Shown: in pieces, positions 24,286 to 46,145 of the stretch | Position numbering within the stretch: position 1 is the stretch's first letter | Layout of the letters: the number at the start of each line of letters is the position of its first letter | Source: Oopsacas minuta | Taxonomy: Eukaryota > Animalia > Porifera | DNA length: 64,000 bases | Direction of reading: 5' to 3' | Assembly: GCA_024704765.1 (NCBI GenBank) | Contig: JAKMXF010000299.1 | Span: forward strand, 62,001 to 126,000 | Notes under the pieces: model-generated | What the model saw: the letters and a program-made list of their open reading frames with translations, nothing else | What the model was told of the DNA's origin: nothing | Database searches by the model: none | Program-made: the position numbers and the translations under genes

Positions 24286-24711
24286 CAGACGTATCTCATG
24301 ACTGACTAGCATTTGATCTGTATATTGACTTGTTTGTTTGATTGTTTGTTTGTTTGTTGATGTATTGTTGTTGTGGTATAATTTGTTAGAAATATGCTAT
24401 TATAGGGATCTTTAAAAGTTAATTTAATTTGTCTTTACTATATCAGAGATTGATTCAATACAAGAAGTCTGATAGCTCGCATGTAAATTATTAGGATGTA
24501 TTAATAATGTATTTTACAAATATAGACGATTTTCTCACAATAATTACGAGAATTACTTATCCAAAATCAACAAGTTTCGTTTCGGATACCACTACGTAAT
24601 GGTTCTTAACTACAAAGCAAATTCCCTGTATCCTGTTTCCTGGTCTTTCCTTTCATTATTCCTTATTTGGCAATTTATTTACTCTGTATTTATTGCTATC
24701 TCTAGCTAACA

Positions 24712-25420
24712 ATGGCTCAAGGTCTCCTCATAGGTTTGATATTCTGCATTACAATGACGCTATATTCCCAGGGTAAGTGAGTAATCTATTTATGCTCATT
24801 ATTAGTTATTTGATTGCTCCACTACAGAATTTGCTAACCCTTCTCCACAGAATTATGTAATAGTATAGCATGTATGGTAATACAATACTAATTAATATCA
24901 ACTTTATTGATAATTATAGTACCTTCCTGGTTGAACTAGGATATATATGATGTCTCTTATTATTTCCAAATAACAAATAATAGCATAATGCTGTCAGCAT
25001 TAGAGGAGGTATGTGTGAATCCTTTCCTAACTTAAGTATTCAAATAATGCTTTGTCCAGTACTTGTGCATTGTGTATTATAACTTATGATATACTACAGC
25101 GTTTAACATAGCTGTATGGGGATATTATCTAGTTTTCATGCTATGGAATATATACATTACTTTAATTGGGGATAATCACATAATTCTAGTGATTTCACCT
25201 TGAGTTAATTGGTTATTATACCCGATAATACCATTAGAGTATTGTCTTATATATCTGTACATCAAATTAAACGAAGCACTTAAATATTCCTTGAATATTT
25301 CTCTTCACATCAGAGTAGCTGGCGCTCTTATATAGCCTTTTAATGAGTTTATTGAGTTTCTTCTTTATTTTTGTTTTCCCAACATTACCGATATCATGTG
25401 CAAATGCAATTTGTAATGGC
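24712..25420 (+). pseudogene. Candidate signal-peptide exon (24712-24772) followed by apparently decayed cadherin-like exons; possible 5' end of the cadherin-GPCR
   Basis: MAQGLLIGLIFCITMTLYSQ ends at G|GTAAGT (phase 1). Downstream pieces read EFANPSPQNY, PSWLN*DIYDVSYYFQITNNSIMLSALEE and LHIRVAGALI*PFNEF, with internal stops; the last resembles LHVLPFNEF at about 33930. Confidence 0.35.
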
Positions 25421-25604
25421 TTTTTCAGAAGCTATTGTATTTCTGCTCATAGCCAGAATATTGTATGGTTATACATAGGCATGAAGTGATTCATCTATTT
25501 CACTGTATTGAAGCACCGCCTGATATAGAAAGTATATAAGGCCCCAGTTAACTATATAACAAACTCAAATATATAGGATTGATAATATAAATATCTCTGA
25601 TAAA

Positions 25605-26600
25605 ATGGCAGAAATAGAATCTTCAAAGCTTCTGGTGGATGTAGGCCAGATAAAAGGTGGCTATGATGCAGATCTGTTCATTGAGGATGTAGAACAGTTT
25701 ATCTGTGCTATATGTAGTGGTGTATGTAGAGAAACTCAACAAGTATCAACCTGTGGTCATATATTCTGTAGATCTTGTATCGGATACATTATATCGCATT
25801 CAGGGTTTTCTCTTAAATGTCCACTCGACAACGTAGTTATATCAAAGCAGCAGGTTAAAGATGACGTATTTATAAGGAGACTAATAAATTCTTTTAAAGT
25901 TAAATGTGTATTGCATGAGAGAGGTTGTGAATGGGTAGGAGAGCTAGATTGTGTTACCAAGCACTTATTATCGTGTAGTTACAGCACGTCTACTAGTTCT
26001 GCTACTTCCTCTCCTATTGCTTCCCCATTACCATCATGTCGTCCTTCTGTTCGTTCCTTGCCACGCCTACCTTCCAGTAGAACAGAAATGCCCAATAGAA
26101 CTAACCTGCAGTTGAGTTTGGATGATGAAGACTACACTGAACAAATAGATGAGGTTATATGGGGAGTTGTATCGAGTGATAATCCTCCCCCTCTACCCCC
26201 TAGATTCACTCCAACAACTCGTGGTCCCTCTCTTCCCCATATAGGAACAGAGACTAGTGCTGTAACACCCTTAGATCATCCATGGTATAAGGAAGGGATG
26301 TCACGGAAGGAAGCAGAACAACATTTACTCAACTTTCGTATTGAAGGTGGATTTGTCGTCCGCCCATCCATGACAAGAACTTCAGGGAACTACTCTCTAT
26401 CAATTTTGTACGAGAGACAAATCCTTCATTTCCGTGTACAGAGAAAGCCTGATAACACTTTCATTCTAGGTGAATCTATCTCAAAACGATTCACTTCAGT
26501 AGAAGAATTGGTAGAATATTATTTGCATAATTCAATATACATGCATGACGGTAGAAACGCCAAACTTTCACAAGTATTCGGCACCCACATACCCCACTGA
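25605..26600 (+). CDS. TRAF-type RING + Zn finger fused to a Pro-rich linker and an SH2 domain, intronless
   Basis: CAICSGVC...TCGHIFCRSC...CPLD (RING); VKCVLHERGCEWVGELDCVTKHLLSC (TRAF-type Zn finger); PPPLPPR; WYKEGMSRKEAEQHL...GGFVVRPS...YSLSI...HFRV...FTSVEELVEYY (SH2). Confidence 0.85.
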   Translation: MAEIESSKLLVDVGQIKGGYDADLFIEDVEQFICAICSGVCRETQQVSTCGHIFCRSCIGYIISHSGFSLKCPLDNVVISKQQVKDDVFIRRLINSFKVKCVLHERGCEWVGELDCVTKHLLSCSYSTSTSSATSSPIASPLPSCRPSVRSLPRLPSSRTEMPNRTNLQLSLDDEDYTEQIDEVIWGVVSSDNPPPLPPRFTPTTRGPSLPHIGTETSAVTPLDHPWYKEGMSRKEAEQHLLNFRIEGGFVVRPSMTRTSGNYSLSILYERQILHFRVQRKPDNTFILGESISKRFTSVEELVEYYLHNSIYMHDGRNAKLSQVFGTHIPH

Positions 26601-27372
26601 TACTCTACAAGCTCTTACCGCATTCGCTGCCGCAGATTATATTTTCAATCATAAATGTTATAGTTTGTATGTAGAAATGCAATATATTAAACTTTTTAAG
26701 TCTGACTCAAATCTTACTGACTGCTTTGACTAATACATCGCCTAATTTCCATAGCAAACAACATTATTTTACTCGTTAAAATATGAACTATTGCGAGAAA
26801 GGTTCTTAGCCTTATGGCAAAGATTATAAAAATTGTCTCCATAATTTCAACAGAGCAACATGTGCAAGTTATACATGCAACTATCTAGTTCTTGGAATCT
26901 TGCCCTGTATAGTCTTGTTATAGATACAATTATTGGAAATAGTTATACAATATCGACAGAATACAGTAATGCTAATAAAACGTGAATTGTAAGGAGAATT
27001 AAATCATAGATGGAATAACACAATTAATATTGTCACGAGCAGACTTTTTATTAGAAATATGACTCTCTATATCCTGACATGGAGGGAACGCTAAATACAC
27101 TATTTACATGCATAGTACTTTATATTATAACGCGAAATATTTCCTCTGACCTAATTGGGTGTAAATACCCTGTATAATTCTATGAATTTAAATATTCGCT
27201 GACTGACTTGAATGATAAGGGAAACTAAGGTAATTTCTTGACACGATAAGCATTCTATTTTGCGGTCTCATTACTTTCATATAATATTCTTTGTCCACTA
27301 CCAATAATAGAGGTGTTCTTTATTAGAGACAGTACTTAGTACTAAACTCTGCTTATTAGTCTATTCCTTTAG

Positions 27373-30300
27373 GTCAAAATGTTGATATGTTCCTCCCACT
27401 ATTCCTAGAGCCTGGTACAGTTATCGGCGATTTAGACGCGTTAACACACCCTGAATTTATGCAAATACAAAATGCACCGTATGATCTACTACAAACTGGA
27501 GACAGTGATAAAGTTAGTATCACATCTAATCTATTGACTTTATTAAGTGTTCCTATCTCAGAATCCGTGTACGTCATTTCTATCTCGCATTTATCAGGTT
27601 ATACAACTAAATTTTGATTAATATAATCTGCAAAATCAATCAACTAATCGATTTATTGTATCCATAGGAACCTTAACACTAACTCTACACTTTATAATAA
27701 ATAGAGATCCTTATATTCCCACTATTACACCTGGTGTAGTGTATCTTTCTATACCAGAAACAGCTGTATTAGGACATACAGTACAAACCTTCACATGTTA
27801 TAACTCCAGCTTTGATCTCTCTCATGTTATGCTGGTAGAATTCTACCTACAGGAAATGATAGGTTTATTCAAAATATCAATAGGAGGAGAGGTAAGTGGA
27901 TACCGTAATACTCACTGAATATAACTTCAGCTTTATCATTCAAAACCTAATAGTTTGCAATAATATATTTCTCTGAATACTTCTATCAGTGATATTCCTC
28001 ATTGACTCTGTATAAGTTTATATATTAACTGAGATGATTTGAATAACTGTAATTTTGTGAGTTCTCATTACATTAATGTTGTAAGCACTTACATAAATTA
28101 ATACTAAAGTTATTCGAATTCATTTCAGTATTAGCAATGAATATTTATATGCTATACTAGAAATTTGTGTAATAACAAATCACAGCGTGGTGTATCAGGA
28201 CTATCTTGCACAGGTTTATATCCTAAGGATGGATAGAACTTGCATGCTTCTTTCAGAACGCTAATTGTCTCTACGTATACATTTCTATAGCCACGGCTCT
28301 TTATCGCGGTTTCTAACACCCCCATTAATGTCCTTCCTAATCCATCTCTTCTATGTTCTGGTACTATATACATTTTACGTATTTCAACTGAATCAGGGCC
28401 TCTATGTATCTTATAATAAGCAGCAGTCGCTACTATCTTGCCATCTCTCTCTGTAACGAAGAATTCTCCTTTGTCATCTTTATGGTAGAATTCTTCTACC
28501 CTCAGGGCATCCTCATCTGCTCCCCCTTCTCCTGTATCGAGAGCTATACCATAGGGCTTGAGACACGCCTCAATTAACTCCACTACTTTATCTCTATCTT
28601 TTGCTTGCCATGCACGTATCACATATTCTTTGTATATTGACTTTAATCCCGTTGATGGAGTTCTGTCACTGTAAGCCATTACCCGTAAAATCAAGCTAAT
28701 TAATGGAATTACATGTTATGTAAATTTAATTGTCCACCACAATTACACAATGTATACAACTAAATGATTATTGGTCAGTTAATTATGAATTATTTTTAGC
28801 CAAAGCTTCCAGTATATCCAAGAGAAGGTCTTTAGTGAGATCTTGAAAATCTAACATTTCGAAAACTTTGTTAAAATTAGCTACAATTTGATGTAGTGTG
28901 TACTTCTTGACCTCTTCAACTCCTATCTCACTCGAAATTCTCAGGAGATTAATCACATTTTCGCGGGAAATCCTCTGTTCTAACGCTTCTTTACAAAACA
29001 CCTGTAGTCTGGAGTTACTAAATCCGAAAAAGTTAGGAGCTTGAAATATGTAGAGTGCATTTTCTGTGCTCAGCTTTACGTCAGCATAGTAAATATAGTT
29101 AAGCAATGCTTTGAATGATTGACAAGATGGTTCAATCTATAAATACATATTTTTATTAAGATTGTATTCATACAAATATTTCTATTATTTATACCTGTCC
29201 AAACGTGATATTAACCTTAGCATCTGGAGGCATAAAGGATCTAAACATTGCTTCAAAGTACTTGCATCTAGCAGCTAATATGCATTTGTGTGCTGGTAAA
29301 CTTATAGGACCTATTTGCAATAGAATATCCGCGAATTGTAACCCTAGATCTTCTAAGAAGGCTTTTAGATCAGATTCTAGTGTGGGGTAGAATTGGGGGG
29401 TGAGTGTTGAGGGATTATAGCTACACTCTGGGAGGGAGTATTGATCTGGTATCTGCTGGCCTCTAGAGTGTTTCAGCTGTTTACGGACTATCTCTACAAC
29501 AAGCGAGCTAGCTAACGAATCGAATTCTGGCAGCATCACAACCTACACAATTAGCCTTTTTAACGTAATCATATATAATTATGTGTAGACTATTAACCTG
29601 CTGGTAATGTCCATCTCTTACTACAAACTTGATACAGTACTCTTTAAGCTGATTGAGGTATAACTCGTGAGCAGATAACAACAGTGATAGCACGTTATCT
29701 ACACAAACAGCATTCTCTATATAGTGAATACACAACTTCTCTAGCTTCTCTGTCTCTAGGATTATTGCCAGTTTTGTAAGCTCAAGTAAGCATTTTAGAC
29801 TCCTACTATAAGTCGTGAATATTACTGGATTAATAATACCTACCATATGGATGAGTTAATGAGCACGGAATCTCACACCCCCTACATCGTACTATATTGA
29901 CATACCTTAACTGGGACGTCGTATCATCTATAATACTGCTAGGCCATAAGATATGATCTGTATAGAGGAAGTGTAGAGCTATCTTAAATGCTTCTGGATC
30001 TTGATCTGATAGAGTTAGTGTAGATATTTCGTGTGGCTGAATACCACCAGGTCCTGGCTTAGCAAAGTTACCTAACAACCAATACGTTATTATGGAATTC
30101 AAAATTATATACAATCAGCTCTTACCAGAACTCAACAAGTGTTTCCGTAGAAACGGAGATCTGGCTGCTACAATAGCAACATGAGCTGGAATAACCTCTC
30201 CATGTTTTCCTACTATGAACTTTAAATCACAGAATTCCTCCTTTTTCAAGAGGTTAGCGAAATCATCAGTTAGTGTACATTTAGGATAATTAGCTATATG

Positions 30301-33300
30301 GAAGCTGAACAAGTCAGATAAACGAATAGGAGAAGAGTCAATCATTCCACCGAATATATACATCCTGTTACCCTGTATAGCTGCTGAGTGGAATAGTCTA
30401 CCGTTAGGTATCTGTGATCCAGGAGCTGGGTCTATCTTTTCCCAGGAACTAGACTCTACATCGAACTTATGCAATTCATTAGGTAATGTTCCATCAGCTG
30501 ATCCCCCGAATACATACAGACTGTCTCCATGAGCTACCATAGTGTGTCCATACCTTCTCTGAGGTGGATATGGTCCGAATCTGAGAAGGTACTCAGTTTG
30601 TATCTTAGTCCAGGTCTAAGGATAACTCTGTATAACTATACATGCATATTGTGTTGTTTAGTAACTATGCTTACCTGCTCTGCGAAGGAGAACTGATACA
30701 AATTGTTGGTTATCTTAGCGCCACTTTGTCCTGAGAACACATACATATGACCCTTAATGGTTGCCATGGGGAAGTTACAGCAAGTAGGCGGACTTTCTCC
30801 CACCTGTCTGACACACTCCCATTGTACAGCACTGTGTACAGATATGTTAATCCTCCACATATCATTTAGTCGTGTGGTACCGTCATAGCCCGCAAACACA
30901 TACAACCAGTTCTGGTACACACAAGATCCGTGGGCGGATCTGCTAGCGGGGTAGCGGTCTCTTATGACGTCAGACCAGTCTACCCAGTGTCTGTTTATAA
31001 ATCTATATTATTGTATTAATATACACAAATGTTAAAGTTACATGCTGTAATTCATAACTTACTTGAATTCCAGAAGGTCATTTTGGTTTCTAAGTTGAGC
31101 ACTCGTATCTCCCGTGTATCCTCCAAACACAAACATACTATCCTTATACACGACAGCAGAGTGGTGGTAACGAGGAGAGGGGGGACTCCCCCAGGTGTAC
31201 ACACGGTCCCAGCTCTTCTGGTCTATCCGAAACATCAACAAGTCATTGAGCATCTTCTTTCCGTCATCTCCCCCAAATGTGTATATCCCTCCATCCCATG
31301 AAACAGTAGTGTGTTTACTTCTAGCCGGCACAATATCAATGCAGCTCTGTAGCATATGCCATTTATGGACGATACATTTCTGGTTGAAATCAAGAGCCAT
31401 TAGATTAACATACTCGTCTTCTACAGCTGGTCCTCTATCCTCTGAATGGTAGTTAGGATTGATTGAATGATACAGATTGGGATGCTGATCATAGGACATA
31501 GATTTGCCATCAAATGACGCCATAGCTATATAATCTGTATTTCTGTAGAATATTAGTTGCTATTATAAAGTGCTATTTGAATTTACTGAAAAGCAATTGA
31601 ATTTCATAGAAGTTTTACTAAATTTACTATCGTTATCATTTAGTAGTGTTTCCAGTTATTCTCAATGTTGAAGGATAATTAATTAATATTTTATTAGAGT
31701 AGCCAGAATGAATCGTAGGTAGATTTGTTAAAATCATTTTATTTTAAGAAATCATTAAATTTTGCAATTTGTACAAGTCTCATTAGGTAGTCAGACAGTA
31801 GACTGCTTATAGCTAGCAGTGTCTAGTATTTTCACTCCGCACATCCCACATATGCCTTTTTTATAAGCGCAAGCAGGACAATAGTTGTAGCCAGATTGGT
31901 GCAGCTGATCCTTGCATAAGCGACATGATCTAAAGACAGAGTAAGGAGAAAATCTGCACTTTTTGCCGCTCAATAGCTTGTTCTCTCCCAGCTTAACCTT
32001 TCCGCTACTCACTGTGTTTCTAGCTCCATCTTTCCACACGTCTGGAGTAGCCACCTTTCCCAGTTTCTTCTCGCATTTCTCGCAAACCATATATAAATAC
32101 TCTAGATCTCAGAAAATTAAGAATTATGTTTTGGAAATATAAATGAACTAGTCAACTGCATTATGTTGACACTTTGTCATCAGATATTCAGTTATATCAC
32201 TAATGCATAATGAATTGAGGTTTATAATTGGATTCTGAATGAGATAATACCTGAATTATACCATACTAGTGCGGCCTAACTAGTGGAAGTAAAAGGTAAA
32301 TGACAATAATACAAATCCCAACCATGGATACCTATAAAGAATTCGAAACTGAGTTGTAGTGAAGTTTTCTAATAGCTAGGAGTTGAGAGGGAAGTCGTAT
32401 GGTGAGGTCAACTGACTGATCCAGTTCTCCCTCTCCAATATCCCCTTACTCACGATCTCTCTTAGTTTCATTCCTTGCTCAATACTATATTTCCTATCTC
32501 CTATCTTCTCTACTGGTATCAATAACCTTGTAGCTGAGGTGGTAAACACCTCATCAGCTTCCAACACTTCCTTGAGAAGATATCTAATTGTATGAATTAA
32601 ATAAAATGAGTAATTAATTACACATGAAGATACATACTTTCCAATGTTGATCTTATACCCAATGTTTTGTAGGATAGTCATCACGATGGTAGCGGTAATA
32701 GAAGGCAGTATTTTCATCTGTTTGACAGAGGACGTGAATATCTCGCCATTCTTTAGCCAGATAATTGAGAAAGTGGGTCCTTCTAGCACATGCCCATCGT
32801 GTGACGTCAGCAACGCATCGTTATAACCTTCCTTCACTGCCATTCTGGTCATCAGCATGTTAGGTCCATAGCTCATCCATTTCATAGCTCCACTAGTGTT
32901 GCTATGGTAACAACTCCAAGGGAACTCCATAGGAAGTAGAGTTCCTGGTATCTTGTACTTGGTATGTGGATGCCATAATATAATCACACTCTTAGGGGCG
33001 AATTTACTGCCATCTACTCCTGGGTTATCTTCTAGCATCCCTCGGGTGAATAACATTCTAATCTTTCCAGGACCTCCTAGTTCTGCTATCTTCCTCATCC
33101 ACTGCTCCAGCTGTTCTCTGCTCTGCTCTATCTTATAAAGCATCTGCTCTGCACACCTGAACATACGTACGAAGTGTAGATCTAGTCCTACTAGCAGTAT
33201 CTTTCCTTCTGCATTCTTATCCACGTAGATAATATCGAAAAATCCATCCCCTCTTTGTACAGTCAAGTCCCATACTGATATTGCTGCTGTGTTAGCATCC

Positions 33301-36300
33301 ACTAACTCTCCGTTTACCAGTACTGGTGAGCTAGCTGACATACTAAGCAGAAATGTAAAGAGAATAATACAACTAAATATGTGAATTATTTCTATAAGTT
33401 TTATATTATTGTAGTGCATAAAATTACGTATCTAAGGAGTAAGGACGTAATTCATACTAATCTCTTATCTTTAGCTCCAGGTGAGCAGAGAGCTGAATGC
33501 GTTAGACACACCCTTCGTCCCTCTCCTCATCAGCTGCAAAGACCATCGTGCCCCATTCTTTGAAGCCTACGCAGCTATTAATATCAACATAACTCATGCT
33601 AACCCCAACTTCCTAATCTGTGAGACACCACTGACAATTCATCAATGTGAGCAGCTGTCAGATGTCATGCTATCTGACATAATATGCTACCATCCAGTGT
33701 ATCAATATGCCTCTCAGCTGACCTATGTGATGTCTGATACAAGATTTGAAGTATGTGCTAATTCAGTGAAATATACTCTACATTCATTTTCGTTATTTGT
33801 TTAGGAACAATACGGACAAATCCTGCTAAATACTGAGCTTGACTATGAAGCTAGGACGAGAATAGATTTCCAGATAACTGTGAGTGATCCCTTAGACAAC
33901 CTCCTGTCAGCTGTCATAGATGTCACTTTACATGTACTCCCTTTCAACGAGTTCATGCCTGGGCTCTCTAACACTGAGTACCATGTCAGTGAGAACCAAG
34001 TACCTTTCCCTCAATTCTCACTGGAAGCAAGTGATCAGGACCATGGACTGCATGGACAGTTTATTTTCCAGTTTGATACCATAGGTGGTAAGTAGCATAC
34101 ACACCTCACCTATTCCCATTTCTTATACATATCTGTCCCTAGACAATCTCCCATTCACTCTCTCTGAGGACGGTGTAATATCAGTAACGGGTATCTTAGA
34201 CCATGAGGGTACTAGTGATTATACAATAGACATCAAACTAACAGATAAATTAGATCCAGATAGTATGCCCTGTGATAGCAGTACTCTAACTAACATACAG
34301 AGCATACAGATTGTTGTTGATGACGTCAATGAACAGGCTTCTTTCGTAAACACTCCTTACAGCTTTGAAGTATTAGAAACCACACAAATTGGTGCTTTTA
34401 TCGGCAGTGTAGAGTGCAGGGATCCAGATCAGGAATTTGTTGATAACGGAAGAATAAGGTTTGTTACACTGCAATATAGATAGAAATATATCAATTCTTC
34501 ATATTTGTAGATATTCAGTAGCTTTTGGTACTAGCTTGATATCTATTGGATTGACTAGTGGGAGTGTTACATTACAACTACCAATAGATTTCGCTGTTAG
34601 TGCTGGTTTTACAGTAAGTATACGGTGTCAAGATCTAGGAGTTCCTTCTCTACATGATACCTCAGAAGTGTTCATATCTGTCAAGCCTGTCATAGAATTT
34701 GACCAAGTTATATTTACAGCTGATCTGCCTGAGAACTCTGGTGTAGGGACGTTTATACAAACAGTAAGGATAATTTAGCTATTCACACAGAATATTTACA
34801 CTTTTATTCTATAGGTATATCTCTCTACTCAATCTATTGCTTCTCATAACTTCATTTCCCTCTCATTCTCATTTGTAACTGATCCTACAGCTGGTGTTAT
34901 TGTTATTGACAGTATAACTGGAGTCCTGACCTTGAACCAACCAGTTCCATTTGGTATAAATAACAACAAGTATGTTATTACTGTACAAGCAACTGCAGAT
35001 GTTTTGAGTAGTGACGGGACTATAAGTGAGACTATAACAACCGCTCAGCTGATAATTAACATAGTAAATGACACCTATTTATACTTCCCGATCTCCTACA
35101 CCGCTAATGTAACAGAGAATGTTAGAGATATATCTCTGCTCACAGTCATGGCTATTAATAACGTTACAAACACTGCAGATAATATTCTATACACATTATC
35201 AGAATTGAGTAGTGATTTTGAAGTGAATAACATTACAGGAGAATTCTTACTTATATCACCTTTAGATAAAGAGATACAGTCCATGTATACAATAGTGATT
35301 AGAGCGTATGATATGTTTAATACCAGTATAAGAGCTAGGACGTTTGTAACTGTTAGAGTATTAGATTTGAATGACGTCACACCGGTATGTGTCAGCTTAG
35401 CTGATAGCTATATAACAGGACATTATTTCGCAGTTCCCCAGATACTCACTCCACTTCTCAACTGTACTGATCTAGATGCAGAGTCTCCTAACAATAATAT
35501 TACCTATTCATTGATTGAGTATAATTTCCCTAACATATCGATAGACAGTACAACTGGTAGGATATCTGGTATTGGGAATTTAACACTAGGGTTCCATGAC
35601 CTGATGGTATTAGTATTAGATAAAGGGATTGATCCTGGACCTCTTAATGCTACTGAGATAGTTACCCTACAAGTAACGAGGAATGATTTCAATCCTCAAT
35701 TCATAAACGTGACCTCTTTTATTGAACTGTTTGAGAACCATACCCTTACTCCTATACTCGCCATATTTGTATCAGATGAAGATACAGGACCGCCAGGTGA
35801 CGTAATCATCAGCTATAAGGTAATATCACCTAATAATGATGACGTATTTGCTATAAATGCTGCTATAGGAGTATTGAGTTTGATTGCTCCATTAGATTAT
35901 GAACGTACACGTGAGTATATCATAGAACTTAATGCTACTGATAATGGAAGGCCCAGGCGCTCTAATACAACTATGCTGACAATAACGGTGATTAATTTGA
36001 ACGATGAGAGCCCTTACTGTGGTGTATTACCTTCTATACAGCTTGATTTTGATAACCATTTCCCAGATTTATTATATCAACTCTCTTGTGTTGATCCTGA
36101 TAATCTAACAGATCTGTTATTCTATTCAATAAACACGAGTAATACAAGTTCATATTTCTCTATATCTGAAGAAGGTGTTATCCAAACTATTAGCTCTTTT
36201 GTATCTCTATCTTCTCCAATATTTCCTGTAGCTCTGCCTATTCCGATAGTAGTAGCAGAGAATGATTCAGATCTAACTTCTCTCATATATCTTAACGTGT

Positions 36301-39300
36301 TATTAGGAGAGTCTGGATTTGTATTAGAGTTCATAGCCTCCCCTCCTCTCTCCCTCCCTGAGAACTCTCCTATAAATATGCCAATAGCTACATTCATTGC
36401 ATCAGCTAATCCTACTCAAACTAACCTACTTATCCGTTACTCTATTCGTAGTATAACTCCAGAGGATGTGTTTGAGATTAATACTATCTCTGGAGAGCTG
36501 ACACTCTCTCAAAACATAGATTATGAAGATGTTACCGAATATAACGTATCTATACGAGCAGTAGATAACGCTATCTATATGAATATACGTATATTATACA
36601 CGACTATATCTATTATAGATATTTGTGATAACCCCCCTAAAGTTAATCATACACAATCTAGTATCGTTATACCACAAGGTACTGGTATTAATGTCATGCA
36701 CACTTTCCCTTGTTCAGATCGTGATGCGGGGAACAACGGAGAAATATTCTGCTATGTCAATAGCATTCAGCCTATTGTCGATAGTGGAGACCCTCTATTC
36801 GTTATGGCAGGATGTGATCTCATGCTGAATAGAATACTCAATGGTATATGCGAGCTAGAATATAACTTACTAATTAACTGCTCTGATTTGTGTGATGATA
36901 CAAGCCTACGGACAAACTTGTCATTTGAATTCCAAGTTAATATAATACTTGAGGATCTAGAGAGGCCTAGGCTAATGAGTGATGACCTTTATCCTGCTGC
37001 AATATTTATTTTGGAGAATCAAACTGTTCCTTTTGAGATTGATGTAGCTAATGACCACTTTATAGACCGAGACTGTAGCCCTTTTAATCAAACATTCTTT
37101 AATATCATTCACACCCCTTCTGGCTATATGATTTCTGATAAGAATGAAGGACGGATTGTCTTGAACAGAACAATTGATTTAGAGAAAGATGAACTGTTTA
37201 TCTCGCGATTACAACCTAGAATACGTAGTGTACTGACTGTATATGATTGTGAAGAGTTGTTGTCTTCATGTCAAGGAGAAACTAATATGGATTTTGTCTA
37301 TGTTGTATATATAGAAGATGTGAATGATAACCGTCCTTATTGCAACTCTACCATTACTCATCTTACAATTCCTGAGACAGATCCTCTCAATAAAAATCAT
37401 ACTACCTCTGTTATATGCTACGATATAGACAGATCTGCTGATAAATTTGGGATGGTGTATTTTGAAATTGACCCGAATAATTCTATCGCAAAAGAAACCT
37501 TTGAAGTGTTCAGTAGTTCAATTCAACCATCAGTAGGCAATGCTCGTAGACTTAAGCTCCGTCTCGTCAAGCCTCTTGACTATGAGAACATTACCCAATA
37601 TGTTGTACTCATCAGAGTATATGATGGAGGATTGCCTTCATTGTACAGTGATGACGTCATTACTCTAACAGTAGCTGTAGCTAGTGTTAACGAACATCTA
37701 CCTTTCTTTGAGAATAAACTTGAGAAGTTATCCCTGTCGGAGGATTTTAACATTTCTAACATTGTACACACTTCAACAGTGATAGATCTTGATCACGCGC
37801 CAGATAACAGAACTCTGTATCAGCTGTCAGTTAACCCAGACGAAAAGTTCTTAATAAATATCACTAATGGAGAGATAACTCTAGCATCTAGTCTAGACAG
37901 GGAACAAGTACATTTATACCGTCTTGTTGTATTAGCTACAGAAGACACGTTAGAACCACACAACCACACAGCTGCACAGACTATTGAGATTACCATAACT
38001 GACATTAATGACAATTCTCCTCAACTAGATTTACCTGCTGTTCCTATACAAATACAACAGAATGTTTCTATCGGTGAAATACACTCATTTCCTTGTTCAG
38101 ACGCTGACATAGACGATAATGGTATATTCAGATGTGACGTCACTTCTCCAGTGTTTAATAACATATTCATACTTAACGTCAAATCCCCTAATTGTAGTCT
38201 ATCTTTAGAGAGTATTCCTGTTCCTAACTGCAATGCATCTCTCATGCATGACTTAGATATTAACTGTACAGATTCTGGGTATCCTAGTTTGAATAGTTCT
38301 TTCAGTGTGAGTGTTGTTGTTGATTTGGTTAATCTACAAGACCCTGTTGTATCCAGTTCTCTCGTTCCTATCCCTGTCTCAGAATCTACCCCTGTTCCTA
38401 CTCTTTTGATAGATATTAGTCAGTTTGTTAGTGACGGGGATTGTCAGAATTTTGGAGTAGTAAAATTCTTCATTAACAATCAATACCCTAGTTTACCTGC
38501 TTACCTATCGCTATCTGAACTGGGAGAGATATACCTGATCAATCAGCTGGATTTTGATACCCCTTACTTTGGATCGCCACCCTCCTTACAACTTGAAGTT
38601 GTAGCGCGAGATAATCCTGGTGCTGTCACTAGCAGAGAGGTTATATTCAATACTACATTCCTGATACAGGATACTAATGACAACCCACCCACTTGTAATG
38701 ATCTCTCTGTCACTATATCGATTGAAGAGGGATATCTCTCTACCCACAATCTATCTACAGTATGTAATGACATAGATAGTGGTTCTAATGGTAAACTTAA
38801 CTCTACTTTTGTATCAGATCATGATTCTCTATTTCTATTCTCAAACATTCCCTACAACACATCACACTCTCTTATATCTATAACTCTGGTAAAATCATTA
38901 GACTTTGAGATGACAGAATCTTATACAGTTATTGTATTTGTATCAGATCAAGGTATGCCACAATTGGATATAACTATCTCTGTAACAATTCTGGTTATAA
39001 ATATAAATGACAACACTCCTTTCTTTACCAACCCTCCAGTCTCTAATACTATAGTAGAGAATGATCCGCCTGGTAACCTATCTGTTATATCAGCTGATGA
39101 TGATGATAAGGGAATATTCGGTCAGCTGATGTACATTTTAATAACAGCTATATACGACAATCGATCTACTCCCATAGACATTAGTATTGGTAATACAAGT
39201 CAATTTGAAGTAGGACTATATTCAGGTGAACTCAGACAGCTGATGCCAATAGACTTTGAACTTAACGTATCATTCCTCTTCGGTATTATAGCAGAAGACC

Positions 39301-42300
39301 TAGGCTCTCCTCCTAACTATGTTAAGGAATATTTTAACATAACAATTGAGAATATAAATGAGTTTGCTCCAAATATAGTACTCCCATCTCCTGGATACAT
39401 CCTACAAGGAGCTCCTGTTAACTCAACTGTTGCATTTGTTAATGTGACAGATGAAGATCGTGATGACACGTTCTCCTGTAACATACGCACTGATTCTATT
39501 CCCTCACCTACAGCAGTAGGCTTATTCACTCTAAGTAGTGTCCCTGAAGGAGTATACATTATACTAGATCAGCCTGTTGTCTGTAACGATCAGCTGTTAT
39601 ATCAGCTGAATATTGTCTGTACTGATAATGCTATCAATTCTCAATCTTCTCTGGCTGTGTTCAATATTAATATACTTTCTCAGGATTTAAATATCCCTAT
39701 TCCATCAACACATACTCTCTCATTTAATATCAACGAGAACGAAGCTCTCAATACTGTAATAACCAATATATTCACTCTGTTATTCGATCCAGATTGTGCT
39801 ATGAATGGATCTTATAGCTACTCTATTATTCTTCAAATTCCAATTAATCACAATTACCTGACTATTAACGCCTCATCGGGAGATGTGTTAATTAACGATA
39901 ATATAGATTATGAATCTCAATTATTCGTATCCACTCTCCCTAAGGTAGAGATCAGGATACAAGTACACGATAATCTCTTGACAGGACCAACCCCTCTCTC
40001 TTCTCCAATCATCCTGGAGGTCAATATAATTGACCTCAACGACAATCCACATATGTGTACTCCTAATGACAATTTCTCAGTACACGAGGATATGATCTTA
40101 GAGATCCCCACTAAAATAACCTGTACAGACAGTGATACATTTACTAATATAACAGCAAAGCTAATTGAAGTGAACTCTAAATTCAGTGTGAAGATGGTTA
40201 GAATCATTGATACAACATACAGGCTATATGTCAATGTTACTAAGCTTAACTTTGAGGATACTCAAAATCACACTCTACTGGTTCTCATATGGGATCCAAC
40301 TAACCCAGATTTTAACCAGACAGTAACCTTACATATTCAGGTGCTCAGTGTCAACGAGTTTGCTCCATTCCTTTTCATCAATACCATGAACATATCAGAG
40401 AACAATAATGTTGGAATAGAATTACTAGATTTGAGTGATTATGTGATCAATACTGAAGGAAATGAGAGCTTAATATTCTCTATGATAAGTCAGGAATACC
40501 CTTTCCCGTTAGAATTAGATCCCAATACAGGTATCCTTACTCTCAATACATCTCTAGACTATGAAAACCCAGACCATAGATCGATCATGCTACAAATTGT
40601 AGTTACTGATACTGGAATACCTCCAATGTCCAGCCCTCTAGCTACACTTACACTCACTTTGATTGATTTAAATGACAATCCTGTCACTATAGATTACATT
40701 AACAACCAAAGTGATTTCCAAATATTACAGTCACAAAACAGTGGAATTGTAGCTAAACTAAGTTGCATTGATCCTGATACTTATCTTTCTAATATACTTT
40801 TCAATTGTTCTCTCGACCCATCAAGTAATCCTATGAACTTTGGAAGTGACGTATTCTTTCTTTCCTATTCAGAATTTGTTTGTGATATACTGGCTATACA
40901 ATACCCTCCGTGTATTGATCAATTTGTATACAATTTAACTGTGAACTGTGAAAATACAAACGACCCCCATTGGACAAGTTCATTTGATATTCAAGTTCAT
41001 CTCATCCCCGAGAATTTAGTTGCACCCTCCGCCGGAGATGTATTTCCTATCTTGGAAAACACTATTTCAGAATTAGACACAGCTAATTTCCCAATAATCG
41101 TTCCTTCCACTAGTGATATATCAGAGAAAGTCTCAGATTCAGATTGTGGTGTATTTGGTGAGATTTTATTTCGTGTTGATAGAGTCAAGTCTAGAAACCT
41201 TGAGTATGTATCTGTGAATAATCGTACTGGTGAGGTCACGATAATCAGAGAGGTAGACGCGGAGGTACTTAAGCTGCAAATAGGTACCAAGCGGATAAAT
41301 ATCTTCATAGATGTGGTGGATAATAATGGAGAGGTTGGCTACTTGATATTCAATGCGAGTGCTAATGCTACTAACTTGATCACTATAGATATACAGGACG
41401 ATAACGATGAACCGCCTTCGTGCAATATAAGAAGTTTATCCCTGACCTTACAAGAAGAGAATGCTAATATGTCTAAGGTACCAGGTGGTCAATTCATATG
41501 TATGGATAATGACAGTTGTCCTGTGCCTGGAAGGGAGATAACAGCAAATGCTTCGTACCCATTTGGAATTATTGCAACAGCAACTATGTGTGTTGATGAA
41601 ACTAAGCTATATGAACCCGCTGTGTTTGAGGTTTTCGCATATTCCATCAATTTAGAAGTACGTAAACAAGTTGTTTATGAGATTGAAATATTTGTTAGTG
41701 ATAGTATAAACTCAATCACTATACCAGCAACTATTACTATTCTAGATTTACCAGAGTTCCCTATCGAATTCTCTCAATCTTCTTACGAATTAATTATTAA
41801 CTATACAGCTCCTGTAGGCCTTGTAGACTTCTTTGTTACAGCTACTGATGATGACTTTACAAGTGAAATCAGGTACCAACAATATATCCCCCTCCAACAA
41901 TGCTATTTATATTATGTTGTGATCTATATCTCTCTTTTAGATACACTTCTGATAACCAGTCCTTCTCAGTAGACTATATGAACGGGAGTATCTATATTGA
42001 ACGTAATTTTTCATTAACTGGCAACACAACATTTGAGGGTATCATAACAGCTACTGAGTTAAATACAGCTGATACAACAGCTGTTACTCTAAATATTATA
42101 GTCAATCATCCTCCCATTTTTACAAAGCATAACGTAACAGAATACTGTGTAGATGATATTACAACATTTATATCTCTGAATTATTCAGATAACAACCTGA
42201 ATACTCCAGGACAAGATAAAGTGAGATTTTATTTCCTAAGTCTATCCAACCCTCTCTTAACTAACATCACTACCAACTCAACAAGTTAGTTATTAACTAA

Positions 42301-45300
42301 TTTGTTACTTACTAAAATATCATCACCCCTCTCTTATAGTTGAGTTTGCTGCAATAGATGCTAGCTCCTTCTCTATCACTGACCCTACAGAATACACAAT
42401 AATAATAGAGGATAGCACTGGATATACAGATTCATTCTCATTCAATGTAACCCAGTGTAGCATTACTAGGAGACGAAGATCACCGGAAACTCGCTCTAAG
42501 AGAAATATTAAATCATTGCACTTTACTAAACTAACTACACTAGTATATATCCCTATATCATTCTCTCCTGGCTCTACACTACCCGTACAATCTTGTAGGA
42601 GCGAGCTAACACTACCTATCACATACTCTCTGCTACTAACTAACCACAGCGACTGGCCGTTTGCAATAGAGCCTGTATCAGCCGAAATACAAGTATCAAA
42701 CTCCCTGTATCGTCTCACATACCATCTGGTTATAGAGTGTATGAACTCCCTACATGATCAGATAGCTAGCTATGTCGTAATTGTCCTGGTCCAGAATGAA
42801 TATATCCCAATATTCAATAAGGTATGTAGATACATTTATTACATCAAATTTCATTGCTTACTCTGTGTATATTTGTTGTAGACTAAAACTAGCTACGAAT
42901 TTTTAGTGAAAGAGAACTCCGCTATCAATACAGTTGTTGGTGTTGTTCTAGCTGAAACACTTCGCATGCATACGGTGTCCTATCACGTTAATACTGTAGC
43001 ATTTGATGTTATGCAATACAGTGGAGTAAGTCATATGTCAGCTGTTTGTTGTAGTGTTGTTTATATTACATCTGTTTAGGGAGTAATACTCACCTCTGCT
43101 CTTGACTATGAGATTCAATCAAGCTATAGCTTTATAGTAACAGCTATTAATATCGATATACACTCTATACAGCCTAGCTCAATTACATCTGTCACTGTCA
43201 CTGTGACAGATGTCAATGACAATCCTCCAATATCTGTTGGAGACTTAACACTAGTGATATACATATCTAATCAACAGGACCATCCTATTGGACAAGTATT
43301 TGACCAGGTAAGGATATTTCAATACATAAACATATTTAATTCGTGTTATGTATAGGTATTCTGTACAGACGCAGACTCTCCTGAGACAAATCTAATCGAG
43401 TATTCATTAGAAACTCCACACCTAATATTTGATATCACAACCATAGAAGGATACATATACCTGTCCTCAAATGCTGAACTACTGACTCTAGAATATAGTA
43501 ATGTATTCATAACCAGATGTACTGATCAGGCTCATATACCTAACCCAGCATTTGACAGATCTGTTATCACAGTATCAACAAGGCTTCATTCTTCCATTAC
43601 ATGTCCTTTTGTGACTAGCTATAACCTCACATGGCCAGAAACAGAACCAAATACAACCGCACGAGTTTTATGTCCTGAAACATTGAAAAGTATATTTGAT
43701 ATTTATTTGTATTTACTATAGCTACACTTTATGTATTATGTATTGTAGTTGCTTCTCGTGTGTGTTCTTCCTCTGCTGAATGGATGTATCCTGATATGTC
43801 AGAGTGTGATACTCTCCACAACTTACCTACACCGATTATACCATTAATACCAGAGACAGACTGTTTTGATAGTTTCATAGCTCTCTATTTATCCAATATG
43901 CTTCTTATCAATATCAACTTAGCAGATACTTCTGTAAACAAGTTGCATCTAGCAGGAGACTTGAGTTAGTCATTTCTTACCATTATATTATCAGATTATA
44001 TCTATACTTGTGTATATTTACTTAGGATTAGCTGTTGAGTATTTCTTTACAGCTGACAGTCTATTGACTTGTTTGCCTCTCAACATAACAGCCTTACATC
44101 AAGTAGCAATAAGAATTTTAGGAGGAATTGATCTGTTAACACAGCCTCATTTCTCTGATGCGTGGTTAACCTTGGGATCATATTACCAGAGAATCGTATC
44201 TAGACAATTAGTATATACCCTGAATAGCTTGACTCATAAATTGACGTCACTCTATGCTGACAGTACTCAATTAATCCTATATAATTACCATCATTTTATT
44301 GGTAAGGCCTCTTTATATTATTCTCTATATTACCAAGTCTGTTATGAACTTCATTTCTTATAGCTAATGAACTGCATCCAGATCAAATCTCTACTATCCA
44401 TAGCCCATATTTATTTACCGATACCCTGCTAACATTCACCAGCTGTTATCTGCAAGCTATCTCTCAAGAACTAGGGCTATCTTACTTCAATGATACTGTA
44501 GCATATTTATTGCAATATCTACTACCTCATGAATCTATTTATGGTGTATTGAGGACAGGGGTAAGCACTAGTTATGTGGGGGTATACTCCAGTGGGTATA
44601 TTGATAATAATCCTAACTGTACTTTCAATATAAGCTTTACAACAAGACAAGGAACAGTGAGTTAATTTGAAATTCATTTTCTATCCCCGTATCTTATTTA
44701 CTTTTTCATAGGGGGATCATATCTGCGCTGTCTGGGAATTCGACTCAGCAGACGTGGGTCATTGGAATGCAGATATTTGTATGACATATTTAGGAGATAC
44801 AGAAGTTGTTTGTAGCTGTAGGGGTGTGGGAGTAGTTGGAGTGATTGGTACTACACCTCCAGTAAGTTTCCCACTAACATTTATTAATGAAAGTTTTATC
44901 CAAATACTCTTTGTTTTAGGCTGTGTATCCTGATTGCTTCCCTCTCGCTAATCTAGTGGCATTTATCCTATTTATTCTAAGCTCAATAACTATCTTACCG
45001 TGTGTGGTTATATCCATAGTCCTGCTAATAGTATTTTCTAGTAAAGAATACAAGAAACCATCTCTATATTTCAAACTACACACTCTGTCATTCTTGCTAC
45101 TAGCAGAGATTGTAAACTTTATTGGTATATTCGTGATACGTTATGATGAAGTGTGTGAGATTATAGCTATTATTACACACAATTTGTTTGTATTTGTATT
45201 TTTCTGGATTCTAATTCTGTCTTTCTTTCATTTGCTACAATTCCTATTTCCAAATAAAGAAGACATTCTCAATAAATTCTCACTAGCTCTATTCTTTATA

Positions 45301-46145
45301 GGATATGGTAAGTTACCATCATGATTACTAACAACATAGATGTTTATATTCCCCCTTTAGCTATCCCATTGTGTCTGGTGATAGTTTCACTGATAGACTC
45401 TACTGTATTCGGTATACTTGCCCCTCCAAACACATCTCAATGCAAGTATCTATACTGTTGGATATCTTCAGCTATTTTCCCTACATATCAGCTGATTAGT
45501 AGTGCTCTCCCATTAATAGTAAGTACTTGTACTTATCCATGCATTACTCATAGTTATATATGTTTGTATTAGTTTGCTCAGATTATATTGGCGGCGCCTC
45601 TCTTCCTACATTTCTTCATTCCTAAATCTGATACAGAGACTAAGAAACTTAAACGTTACAAAGTGAACACGAAGCTACAACTCTCTCATGTATACTGTGA
45701 AACTATCCCAGGCTATGCTCAAGTATTTATTTTAGGATTCCATTACGCATTTCTATCTAATGCTTATGAAGGCATTACATTTGGAATACTATCTTTCCTA
45801 TTCACAATTCTTACATCAGTCTTCCTACTGATCTATTACACGGGGTTGATTTCATTTGTAAGTAATGGTTAACCATACAAATATTCTATAGAAACTTCGA
45901 TGTTATTCGTTTAATGTGTGTAGTTAAGCAAGAAGAGCGCTAGACAGTCCTTAAGACCCAAACATTCAGCTACTAATTTCATAAATGCTGAGGACTATGA
46001 GACAAGACTTGTAAGCCGTCAGCACGAGCGAGTTAACTGGGCTTTCCTTAACGCACAAGAGGAGCGGTTTTACGAAGAAGGGCGTCAGCTGGGAGCACAC
46101 TTCAATATTGCTACACCTCTCTTTAATAACCTTTTACCAGATTGA
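27373..46145 (+). CDS. Giant multi-exon adhesion GPCR: roughly 25 or more cadherin repeats (by-eye estimate), HRM, GAIN/GPS and 7TM; true 5' end uncertain (possibly 24712)
   Basis: Repeated LDYE / DxND..P / CxDxD cadherin motifs, including the 2346-aa exon 34932-41872. HRM: CPFVTSYNLTWPETEPNTTARVLCP..ASRVCSSSAEWMYPDMSEC (about 43600-43810). GPS: ICAVW...HWNADIC...VCSC (44712-44861). Secretin-like 7TM at 44923-45858; stop TGA 46143-46145. Upstream exons 27373-27597 and 27668-27891 splice in frame to 33475. Confidence 0.8.
28152..28679 (-). CDS. GNAT-family N-acetyltransferase, bacterial-like, intronless
   Basis: IRAWQAKDR...GEFFVTERDGKIVATAAYY...VEIRKMYIVPEHRRDGLGRTLM (acetyl-CoA motif A)...VYVETISVLKEACKFYPSLGY. 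First ATG is at 28679. Confidence 0.85.
   Translation of the reverse strand: MAYSDRTPSTGLKSIYKEYVIRAWQAKDRDKVVELIEACLKPYGIALDTGEGGADEDALRVEEFYHKDDKGEFFVTERDGKIVATAAYYKIHRGPDSVEIRKMYIVPEHRRDGLGRTLMGVLETAIKSRGYRNVYVETISVLKEACKFYPSLGYKPVQDSPDTPRCDLLLHKFLV
28783..31523 (-). CDS. LZTR1: LZTR1 (Kelch repeats + two BTB-BACK domains), 7 exons: 31063-31523, 30675-30990, 30126-30615, 29906-30071, 29598-29824, 29195-29542, 28783-29136
   Basis: PARSKHTTV...[83 protein letters not shown]...AHVAIVAARSP, AHKCILAARCKYFEAMFRSFMP. Joined by short GT-AG introns. Confidence 0.92.
31791..32090 (-). CDS. CRIPT: CRIPT cysteine-rich PDZ-binding protein, intronless
   Basis: MVCEKCEKKLGKVATPDVWKDGARNT...ENKLLS...CRLCK...YCPACAYKKGICGMCG...YKQSTV (terminal PDZ-binding motif). 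Confidence 0.95.
   Translation of the reverse strand: MVCEKCEKKLGKVATPDVWKDGARNTVSSGKVKLGENKLLSGKKCRFSPYSVFRSCRLCKDQLHQSGYNYCPACAYKKGICGMCGVKILDTASYKQSTV
32376..33341 (-). CDS. PLP-dependent aminotransferase class IV (D-amino-acid aminotransferase / ADC-lyase / IlvE-like); one 54-nt intron at 32584-32637
   Basis: VLVNGELV...AISVWDLTVQRGDGFFD...LDLHFVRM...AMKWMSY (candidate PLP Lys)...DALL...VLEGPTFSI...ILPSITA...ADEVFTTSATR. The in-frame GTATGT...TTAG segment (YVSSCVINYSFYLIHTIR) interrupts the conserved domain. Confidence 0.85.
   Translation of the reverse strand: MSASSPVLVNGELVDANTAAISVWDLTVQRGDGFFDIIYVDKNAEGKILLVGLDLHFVRMFRCAEQMLYKIEQSREQLEQWMRKIAELGGPGKIRMLFTRGMLEDNPGVDGSKFAPKSVIILWHPHTKYKIPGTLLPMEFPWSCYHSNTSGAMKWMSYGPNMLMTRMAVKEGYNDALLTSHDGHVLEGPTFSIIWLKNGEIFTSSVKQMKILPSITATIVMTILQNIGYKINIGKYVSSCVINYSFYLIHTIRYLLKEVLEADEVFTTSATRLLIPVEKIGDRKYSIEQGMKLREIVSKGILERENWISQLTSPYDFPLNS

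What the first reader, a model, noticed from the sequence alone, without database searches (positions are those of the whole stretch)
27892..33474. Four-gene antisense cluster fills one 5.6-kb intron that splits a cadherin motif
Seen: the exon ending ...GLFKISIGGE|GTAAGT (27891, phase 0) continues in frame at ttAG|LQVSRELNA (33475), restoring the cadherin F-x-I-x-x-x-G-x-L-x-V-x-x-x-L pattern. The 5583-nt intron contains GNAT, LZTR1 (7 exons), CRIPT and a class-IV aminotransferase, all on the minus strand, head to tail, and filling almost the whole intron. Inference: a whole operon-like unit of housekeeping and candidate-HGT genes is embedded in a large receptor gene, with possible transcriptional interference or mutually exclusive expression. 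As I recall, abundant nested genes have been noted in a glass-sponge genome, so the phenomenon may be known even if this locus is not.
Basis: partly seen in the sequence, partly recalled or inferred. Interest (0 to 1): 0.8.

Follow-up and report, generated by a model that had tools for sequence, protein, structure and literature searches.

The report
Genes nested inside sponge cadherin gene
In the glass sponge Oopsacas minuta, four opposite-strand genes lie inside one 5.6-kb intron near the start of a giant cadherin gene, a layout shared by seven related sponge assemblies; such nests are already known to be common in glass sponges, so this is a good example and an annotation fix, not a new phenomenon.

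Summary
Exon 2 ends at 27891 before GTAAGT, and exon 3 starts at 33475 after an AG. Both junctions are phase 0. GNAT, LZTR1, CRIPT and a class-IV aminotransferase lie between them on the minus strand and span 93% of the 5,583 nt.

There is no RNA evidence. Comparison supports the intron:
- Seven other glass-sponge assemblies keep the same gene order.
- Donor, acceptor and phase are conserved in all eight genomes.
- dN/dS is 0.1-0.3 for the upstream exons, as for exon 3.
- Exon 2 and exon 3 match complementary parts of one cadherin repeat.

The published O. minuta model (3,837 aa) starts at a non-conserved internal Met in exon 3, so it misses the nest.

New here: a conserved signal-peptide exon at 24712-24772 probably splices to 27373. 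That would also nest the same-strand RING-SH2 gene. GNAT is decayed or absent in six of the eight genomes.

The "operon-like unit" and transcriptional-interference ideas are unsupported. Nested genes are already documented as abundant in glass sponges (PMC10282587). The scan found similar nests elsewhere in this genome (UBASH3, EGR). This is a new member of a known kind, of modest interest.

The parts
24712..24772 (+). Inferred first coding exon of the cadherin gene. It encodes the signal peptide MAQGLLIGLIFCITMTLYSQ plus 1 nt (phase 1), followed by donor GTAAGT.
   Evidence: A Met plus hydrophobic peptide ending at a phase-1 GT donor (GTAAGT, GTAAAT or GTGAGT) lies about 570-900 nt upstream of RING-SH2 in all 8 genomes. 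The split codon with exon 1 is GGT, GGA or GGG (Gly) in 7 of 8, varying only at the third base. This is inference; there is no RNA.
25605..26600 (+). RING-SH2 E3-like gene. It lies on the same strand inside the inferred host intron 24773-27372.
   Evidence: Pfam finds SH2 (E 1.6e-16) and a RING finger. The start MAE(I/V)E is conserved and the upstream frame is not. It lies between the signal-peptide exon and exon 1 in all 8 genomes.
27373..27597 (+). Host exon 1: a cadherin-like N-terminal repeat that enters in phase 1 and leaves in phase 1.
   Evidence: It is conserved at 49-64% aa identity in 7 other assemblies, with AG and GT at both ends. dN/dS is 0.09-0.32. It is single copy in the genome.
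27668..27891 (+). Host exon 2. It ends ...GLFKISIGGE in phase 0 before GTAAGT.
   Evidence: Seen. It is conserved at 36-59% identity with a phase-0 GT donor in all 8 genomes. dN/dS is 0.11-0.33. It is single copy. A profile of exon 2 hits cadherin-repeat proteins many times over. It matches cadherin repeat columns 1-78 of 113.
27892..33474 (+). The 5,583-nt host intron that holds the four antisense genes.
   Evidence: It has a GTAAGT donor and a pyrimidine tract with TAG acceptor. The equivalent intron is 5,131-6,540 nt in the 7 other genomes. Rfam finds no RNA family here.
28152..28679 (-). GNAT acetyltransferase, 175 aa, single exon.
   Evidence: Pfam PF00583, E 5.7e-17. It is intact at 67% identity in L003, a pseudogene in L004, L007 and L010, and undetectable in L001, L005 and L006.
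28783..31523 (-). LZTR1 orthologue in seven open segments (Kelch propeller plus two BTB-BACK units).
   Evidence: Pfam finds Kelch, Beta-prop_ATRN-LZTR1, BTB and BACK. The best PDB match is LZTR1 9mey_B, E 3.3e-57. The end exons are 75-92% identical in 7 genomes. Donor sites are given; exact acceptors were not resolved.
31791..32090 (-). CRIPT, 99 aa, single exon.
   Evidence: Pfam PF10235, E 3e-32. It is 93-96% identical in 7 genomes.
32376..33341 (-). Class-IV aminotransferase (annotated LOD99_7207, 303 aa) with one in-frame 54-nt intron near 32583-32635.
   Evidence: Pfam PF01063, E 1.5e-24. P0001 matches it. The intron is mapped. It is 58-66% identical in 7 genomes.
33475..33750 (+). Host exon 3. 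It starts LQVSRELNALDTPF... in phase 0 directly after the acceptor.
   Evidence: Seen. A stop, or a closed frame without Met, lies immediately upstream in all 8 genomes. It is conserved at 49-74% identity. Its first 40 residues match cadherin repeat columns 75-113.
33805..45309 (+). The remaining cadherin exons, including the 2,385-codon exon at 34815-41969. The gene extends at least this far.
   Evidence: Pfam Cadherin, E 3.8e-103 with 8 stretches. The published model P0027 maps here.

Best explanation
The window comes from the compact genome of the glass sponge Oopsacas minuta. A giant cadherin-repeat receptor gene has three short 5' coding exons spread over 9 kb:
- a signal-peptide exon at 24712-24772,
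- exon 1 at 27373-27597,
- exon 2 at 27668-27891.

Its third intron (27892-33474) is a genuine spliceosomal intron. It interrupts the second cadherin-like repeat and holds four independent genes on the opposite strand: GNAT, LZTR1, CRIPT and a class-IV aminotransferase. The first intron very probably holds a fifth gene, RING-SH2, on the same strand.

Each nested gene is most likely an ordinary separate transcription unit. The host pre-mRNA is transcribed across all of them and the intron is spliced out.

The layout is old and stable within hexactinellids as part of their general microsynteny. It is not a functional module.

Shown here: the sequence features, the gene identities, and conservation of exons, splice sites, phases and order in eight genomes. 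Inferred: the actual splicing 27891>33475 and 24772>27373, and independent transcription of the nested genes.
For: Genome identity: 61,460,524 bases in 365 contigs equals the O. minuta entry in Table 1 of PMC10282587. The aminotransferase is LOD99_7207 of O. minuta.

Gene content comes from Pfam and from the PDB match to LZTR1.

Seven further assemblies (L001, L003, L004, L005, L006, L007, L010) show the same order: RING-SH2, exon 1, exon 2, [GNAT], LZTR1, CRIPT, aminotransferase, exon 3, giant cadherin exon.

Splice sites:
- The exon-2 donor is GTAAGT, GTGAGT, GTGAGA or GTAAGG in phase 0 in all 8 genomes.
- The exon-3 acceptor is YAG in phase 0 in all 8 genomes.
- Read-through of exon 2 stops after 1-21 unconserved codons.
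- The frame upstream of exon 3 is closed and has no Met.

dN/dS is 0.09-0.33 for exons 1 and 2, against 0.07-0.30 for exon 3. Exons 1 and 2 are single copy.

Cadherin repeat match:
- By hhalign, exon 2 covers repeat columns 1-78 (E 7.6e-4) and exon 3 covers columns 75-113 (E 4.6e-3).
- The local HMM gives the same split in all species.
- The exon-2 profile hits proteins with 14-31 Pfam cadherin repeats, matching up to 24 stretches in each.

The start Met of the published model lies inside exon 3 and is Met in only 3 of 8 species.

The signal-peptide exon is conserved in position, phase and donor. The junction codon is Gly and varies only synonymously. RING-SH2 has its own conserved start.
Against: No transcript evidence was obtained:
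- The word search with exon 3 found only a genomic exon-sized ORF.
- The full HMMER search with the exon-2 profile found only exon-sized genomic ORFs and unrelated cadherins.
- Records of the window's own genome are withheld from the contig look-up.

Pfam Cadherin does not reach significance on exons 1, 2 or 3 alone. The profile-profile E-values are modest.

The published annotation does not join these exons.

The signal-peptide exon is short. In the most divergent genome (L003) its assignment is less certain, because the junction codon there is Ser, not Gly.
Confidence: 0.85

Rival explanations
1. Two genes, not one. The signal-peptide exon, exon 1 and exon 2 form a small separate secreted protein that ends by read-through just after 27891. 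The cadherin gene starts at or after exon 3, as in the published model. The four minus-strand genes are then simply intergenic.
For: The published O. minuta model P0027 starts inside exon 3. No RNA junction was seen.
Against: - Exon 3 is conserved right up to its acceptor. The frame is closed upstream with no Met, and the annotated Met is not conserved.
- The phase-0 GT donor after exon 2 is kept in all 8 genomes, while the read-through tails differ in length and sequence.
- Exon 2 would end two thirds of the way through a cadherin repeat, and exon 3 supplies exactly the missing third.
- A model starting at MLSDIICYHP has no signal peptide.
Confidence: 0.07
2. Exons 27373-27891 are dead relics of an old 5' end or of a duplicated cadherin fragment.
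For: Pfam does not recognise them and they are absent from the published model.
Against: - The reading frames are open in 8 genomes.
- dN/dS is 0.09-0.33, the same as for exon 3.
- All four splice sites are conserved.
- They are single copy in the genome.
Confidence: 0.02
3. The co-oriented nested genes are one polycistronic unit, an operon resolved by spliced-leader trans-splicing, embedded antisense in the host intron.
For: - The four genes run head to tail with spacers of 285, 267 and 106 nt.
- No canonical poly(A) hexamer lies between the aminotransferase and CRIPT.
- A YAG lies 2-11 nt upstream of the ATG of CRIPT in all 8 genomes, and of LZTR1 in all 7 genomes where the start could be aligned.
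- A trans-spliced leader has been reported on about 4% of long cDNA reads in another glass sponge (PMC10282587).
Against: - AATAAA or ATTAAA lies after CRIPT and after LZTR1.
- Same-strand runs with equally short spacers are the rule in this window, with at least nine plus-strand genes upstream.
- GNAT decays independently of the rest.
- The YAG pattern was not tested against background.
- There is no RNA data.
Confidence: 0.07

Closest known systems
Nested (intronic) genes of glass-sponge genomes, as described for Aphrocallistes vastus and Oopsacas minuta (PMC10282587)
   Same: Complete genes lie inside an intron of a host gene in a very compact genome. The layout is conserved between hexactinellids as part of extensive microsynteny. 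That paper states that automatic annotation undercounts such nests (2,432 in A. vastus against 83 in O. minuta v1).
   Different: The published O. minuta host model is 5'-truncated, so this locus cannot be annotated there as a nest of this host. Four genes share one intron. A fifth, same-strand gene probably sits in another intron of the same host.
Other nests found by this scan in the same genome (UBASH3 with six antisense genes; EGR with WDR24 and WDTC1; TUT4/7 in LUC7L)
   Same: The genome and architecture are the same, and the nests are conserved in related sponge assemblies.
   Different: The host and guests differ. For this locus no RNA confirmation could be obtained.
Nematode and tunicate operons resolved by spliced-leader trans-splicing
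   Same: The genes are co-oriented with spacers of 100-300 nt and have acceptor-like YAG close to the start codons.
   Different: No evidence of a common transcript or leader addition was found. Poly(A) signals lie between the genes. One member (GNAT) is lost independently in related genomes.

Membership tests
Nested gene in a host intron | Host coding exons lie on both sides of the guest genes, on the host strand. | tested here: met
   Exons 1 and 2 lie upstream and exon 3 plus the cadherin exons downstream. All are conserved and under purifying selection in 8 genomes.
Nested gene in a host intron | The flanking host exons are joined in mature mRNA. | not testable with these tools
   No transcript data could be reached. 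Support is indirect: conserved donor, acceptor and phase, and complementary halves of one domain.
Nested gene in a host intron | The guest genes are intact and lie wholly within the intron. | tested here: met
   All four have open frames between 28152 and 33341. Three are highly conserved.
Cadherin repeat (Pfam PF00028), for exons 2 and 3 | A match to the family profile above the gathering score. | tested here: not met
   There is no hit at E<=1 for the isolated exons. The joined product was not searched.
Cadherin repeat (Pfam PF00028), for exons 2 and 3 | Homology to cadherin repeats at profile level, with the two exons covering one repeat. | tested here: met
   The exon-2 profile hits proteins with many cadherin repeats, best whole-protein E 1.6e-32 and up to 24 stretches in one protein. 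By hhalign, exon 2 covers columns 1-78 and exon 3 covers columns 75-113.
Cadherin repeat (Pfam PF00028), for exons 2 and 3 | Calcium-binding linker motifs (DxNDNxP, DRE, DxD). | tested here: inconclusive
   The linker reads INRDPYIP in exon 2 and ITHANPNF in exon 3. These are degenerate versions of the motif.
LZTR1 | An N-terminal Kelch propeller followed by two BTB-BACK units, with closest similarity to LZTR1. | tested here: met
   Pfam finds Kelch, Beta-prop_ATRN-LZTR1, two BTB and BACK. PDB 9mey_B LZTR1 scores E 3.3e-57, against 2e-22 for the next hit.
Operon (polycistronic unit) | One primary transcript, with downstream cistrons receiving a spliced leader. | not testable with these tools
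   Only spacing, hexamers and acceptor-like motifs could be examined.
Operon (polycistronic unit) | The members are kept together as a unit across species. | tested here: not met
   GNAT is a pseudogene in 3 and undetectable in 3 of 8 genomes, while the other three genes persist.

The most novel reading that the evidence does not exclude
The three stably nested antisense genes (aminotransferase, CRIPT, LZTR1) are transcribed as one leader-trans-spliced polycistron running against the host. Their transcription gates use of the cadherin receptor's far-upstream signal-peptide exons, so host and guests are expressed in a mutually exclusive way. This would be an antisense operon acting as a switch inside a sponge adhesion-receptor gene.
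Probability: 0.06. Interest if true: 0.6.

Novelty: new member of a known kind. Interest (0 to 1): 0.3.

Why it matters
It corrects a gene model. The published O. minuta 'Protocadherin Fat 4-like' protein lacks its signal peptide and its first one and a half to two cadherin repeats.

It gives a concrete case of why the v1 annotation reports only 83 nested genes where a sister species has 2,432.

It also offers a compact test locus conserved in eight genomes, with four antisense guests and probably one sense guest in the first 9 kb of one host. The locus could be used to ask how a host transcript reads through guest promoters and a conserved same-strand poly(A) site.

Beyond that it is an ordinary feature of glass-sponge genomes.

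Tried and rejected
- I looked for the host's first exon between RING-SH2 and exon 1. I used ORF and donor scans, tblastx and nucleotide alignments. No conserved candidate emerged; two O. minuta-only candidates (26860-26965 and 27079-27160) were dropped. The conserved blocks there carry stops and 1-nt indels and look non-coding. The exon was then found upstream of RING-SH2.
- I tested whether that exon could belong to RING-SH2. This was rejected: RING-SH2 has its own conserved MAE start and an unconserved, closed frame upstream.
- I looked for spliced, transcript-derived proteins. The word search with exon 3 and the full HMMER search with an exon-2 profile found only genomic exon ORFs. A ninth, more divergent exon-2 homologue sits on a 1.3-kb contig that is too short to help.
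- Look-ups of the window's own annotated genes are withheld.
- Rfam found nothing in 26000-34500.
- I tried to name the related assemblies from their accession numbers in the literature, and found nothing.
- Exact LZTR1 acceptor sites could not be fixed by a simple splice-site score.
Full report
**What the window is.**
The assembly has 61,460,524 bases in 365 contigs. Those figures equal the ones given for Oopsacas minuta in Table 1 of PMC10282587. The aminotransferase in the finding is 94% identical to NCBI's LOD99_7207 of O. minuta, differing only by a removed intron. The window is contig C299, 62001-126000. It is not human DNA.

**The observation.**
The sequence reads ...ATAGGAGGAGAG|gtaagt at 27891/27892 and ...cttatctttag|CTCCAGGTGAGC at 33474/33475. 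The translations are ...EMIGLFKISIGGE and LQVSRELNALDTPF.... Both junctions are phase 0.

Four genes lie between them on the minus strand:
- A GNAT acetyltransferase at 28152-28679.
- A Kelch/BTB/BACK gene in seven open segments at 28783-31523. Its N-terminal exon matches solved LZTR1 at E 3.3e-57, far ahead of any other Kelch protein.
- CRIPT at 31791-32090.
- A class-IV aminotransferase at 32376-33341, with one 54-nt in-frame intron.

Together they span 5,190 of the 5,583 nt. The description is accurate.

**Is 27892-33474 really an intron of the cadherin gene?**
The plus strand downstream holds a giant cadherin gene. It includes a 2,385-codon exon with Pfam Cadherin at E 3.8e-103. Exons 1, 2 and 3 taken alone get no Pfam hit, so the motif argument needed a test.

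I used orthologues of the aminotransferase and of the giant exon to fetch the same locus from seven other glass-sponge assemblies in ENA. These are L001, L003, L004, L005, L006, L007 (L008 and L009 are duplicates) and L010. All seven have the same order: RING-SH2, exon 1, exon 2, [GNAT], LZTR1, CRIPT, aminotransferase, exon 3, giant cadherin exon.

In all eight genomes:
- Exon 2 ends in phase 0 at a GT donor (GTAAGT in five genomes, otherwise GTGAGT, GTGAGA or GTAAGG).
- Exon 3 begins in phase 0 after a pyrimidine tract and YAG.
- The intron is 5,131-6,540 nt.
- Reading through the donor meets a stop after 1-21 unconserved codons.
- The frame upstream of exon 3 is closed at once, or after at most 27 codons, with no Met.

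Pairwise dN/dS is 0.09-0.32 for exon 1 and 0.11-0.33 for exon 2, against 0.07-0.30 for exon 3. The upstream exons are therefore under the same coding constraint as the undisputed one. They are single copy in the genome.

I built a profile from eleven repeats of the giant exon and compared it with the orthologue alignments. Exon 2 falls on repeat columns 1-78 of 113 (E 7.6e-4). The first 40 residues of exon 3 fall on columns 75-113 (E 4.6e-3). A plain HMM gives the same split in every species.

A full HMMER search with the eight-species exon-2 profile found cadherin-repeat proteins, matching up to 24 stretches in one protein. The best whole-protein E-value is 1.6e-32. Pfam confirms 14-31 cadherin domains in the three top long hits.

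**What is missing.**
No RNA-level evidence could be reached. The word search with exon 3 and the full search with exon 2 returned only exon-sized ORFs from genomic contigs. Records of the window's own genome are withheld from the contig look-up. The junction is therefore inferred from comparison, not observed.

**The published model.**
The NCBI protein 'Protocadherin Fat 4-like [Oopsacas minuta]' (P0027, 3,837 aa) begins MLSDIICYHPVYQY..., at a Met inside exon 3. It lacks the first 64 residues of exon 3 and all of exons 1 and 2. That Met is present in only three of the eight species. The model also has no signal peptide. It is 5'-truncated, which is why this nest cannot be annotated in the v1 gene set.

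**The host starts further upstream.**
Exon 1 opens at a conserved phase-1 acceptor and has no conserved Met. An upstream coding exon is therefore required.

None could be found between RING-SH2 and exon 1. Upstream of RING-SH2, every genome has a short exon that encodes Met plus a hydrophobic signal peptide. In O. minuta it is at 24712-24772 and reads MAQGLLIGLIFCITMTLYSQ. It ends in phase 1 at a GTAAGT-type donor.

Its last base joins the first two bases of exon 1 to give GGT, GGA or GGG (Gly) in seven of eight genomes. Only the third position varies.

RING-SH2 has its own conserved start, MAE(I/V)E, with an unconserved and closed frame upstream. So the exon does not belong to RING-SH2. The RING-SH2 gene (25605-26600) therefore very probably lies, on the same strand, inside the host's first coding intron (24773-27372).

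**The guests.**
CRIPT is 93-96% identical across genomes. The LZTR1 end exons are 75-92% identical and the aminotransferase is 58-66% identical. All three are intact in all eight genomes.

GNAT is different:
- It is intact only in O. minuta and in L003 (67% identity).
- It carries stops, deletions and frameshifts in L004, L007 and L010.
- It is undetectable in L001, L005 and L006.

**Operon-like unit?**
The spacers are 285, 267 and 106 nt. AATAAA or ATTAAA lies after CRIPT and after LZTR1, but not after the aminotransferase. Long same-strand runs with short spacers are the rule in this window. One member decays on its own.

A YAG lies 2-11 nt upstream of the ATG of the signal-peptide exon and of CRIPT in all eight genomes, and of LZTR1 in all seven where the start could be aligned. 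Trans-spliced leaders have been reported on a minority of mRNAs in A. vastus. Leader addition therefore cannot be excluded, but nothing here shows a common transcript.

**Comparison with what is known.**
PMC10282587 reports 2,432 nested genes (12.4% of genes) in A. vastus, but only 83 in the O. minuta v1 annotation. It attributes such low counts to annotation method, and it reports extensive microsynteny between the two species.

The scan's own notes list comparable nests elsewhere in this genome: UBASH3 with six antisense genes, EGR with two, and TUT4/7 in LUC7L.

This locus is one more example. It is well supported by comparison and is missed by the published annotation. It is not a new kind of arrangement.

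**Verdict.**
- The nested-in-an-intron reading is very probably right (about 0.85), pending RNA.
- The operon-like and interference ideas are unsupported speculation.
- It is a new member of a known kind, with interest about 0.3.

Noticed in passing
window 33475-33666 and P0027: The published O. minuta 'Protocadherin Fat 4-like' model (3,837 aa) starts at a non-conserved internal Met of exon 3. It lacks a signal peptide, so the model is 5'-truncated.
   Followed up: yes
L004, L007, L010 (pseudogene); L001, L005, L006 (absent); window 28152-28679: The nested GNAT gene is intact only in O. minuta and L003. Elsewhere it carries stops and frameshifts or has vanished, while the host intron keeps its size.
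   Followed up: yes
window 26640-26705: About 50 nt shortly after the RING-SH2 stop are almost invariant in 7 of 8 genomes (ATAGTTTGTATGTAGAA..ATATTAAACTTTTTAAGT). The block contains TGTA motifs and ATTAAA, so it is probably the RING-SH2 poly(A) site. Host transcription would have to read through it.
   Followed up: partly
window 24696-24711, 32091-32105, 31524-31535 and the same places in L001-L010: A YAG lies 2-11 nt upstream of the start codon of the cadherin signal-peptide exon (TCTAGC in most genomes), of CRIPT and of LZTR1. It is not upstream of RING-SH2. These could be 5'-UTR intron or spliced-leader acceptors. The pattern was not tested against background.
   Followed up: partly
L002:10001-10687: The sample that gave L005 (ERZ25072740) holds a second aminotransferase copy (55% identity) on another contig of similar coverage. 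It has no cadherin, CRIPT or LZTR1 nearby and lies near a THAP9-like transposase gene.
   Followed up: no
window 32376-33341: Outside glass sponges, the best relatives of the class-IV aminotransferase are metagenomic or bacterial proteins at only 25-34% identity. No NCBIfam model reaches its cut-off for it or for the GNAT. This is compatible with an old transfer from bacteria.
   Followed up: partly
L001rc 4030-4330 and the aligned parts of L005 and L006 (host intron between RING-SH2 and exon 1): Several strongly conserved blocks lie here, including TTGTGCAAAGTAC, which is shared with L004, L007 and L010, and a CACGTG box. They carry stops and 1-nt indels, so they are non-coding. Their role is unknown.
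   Followed up: partly
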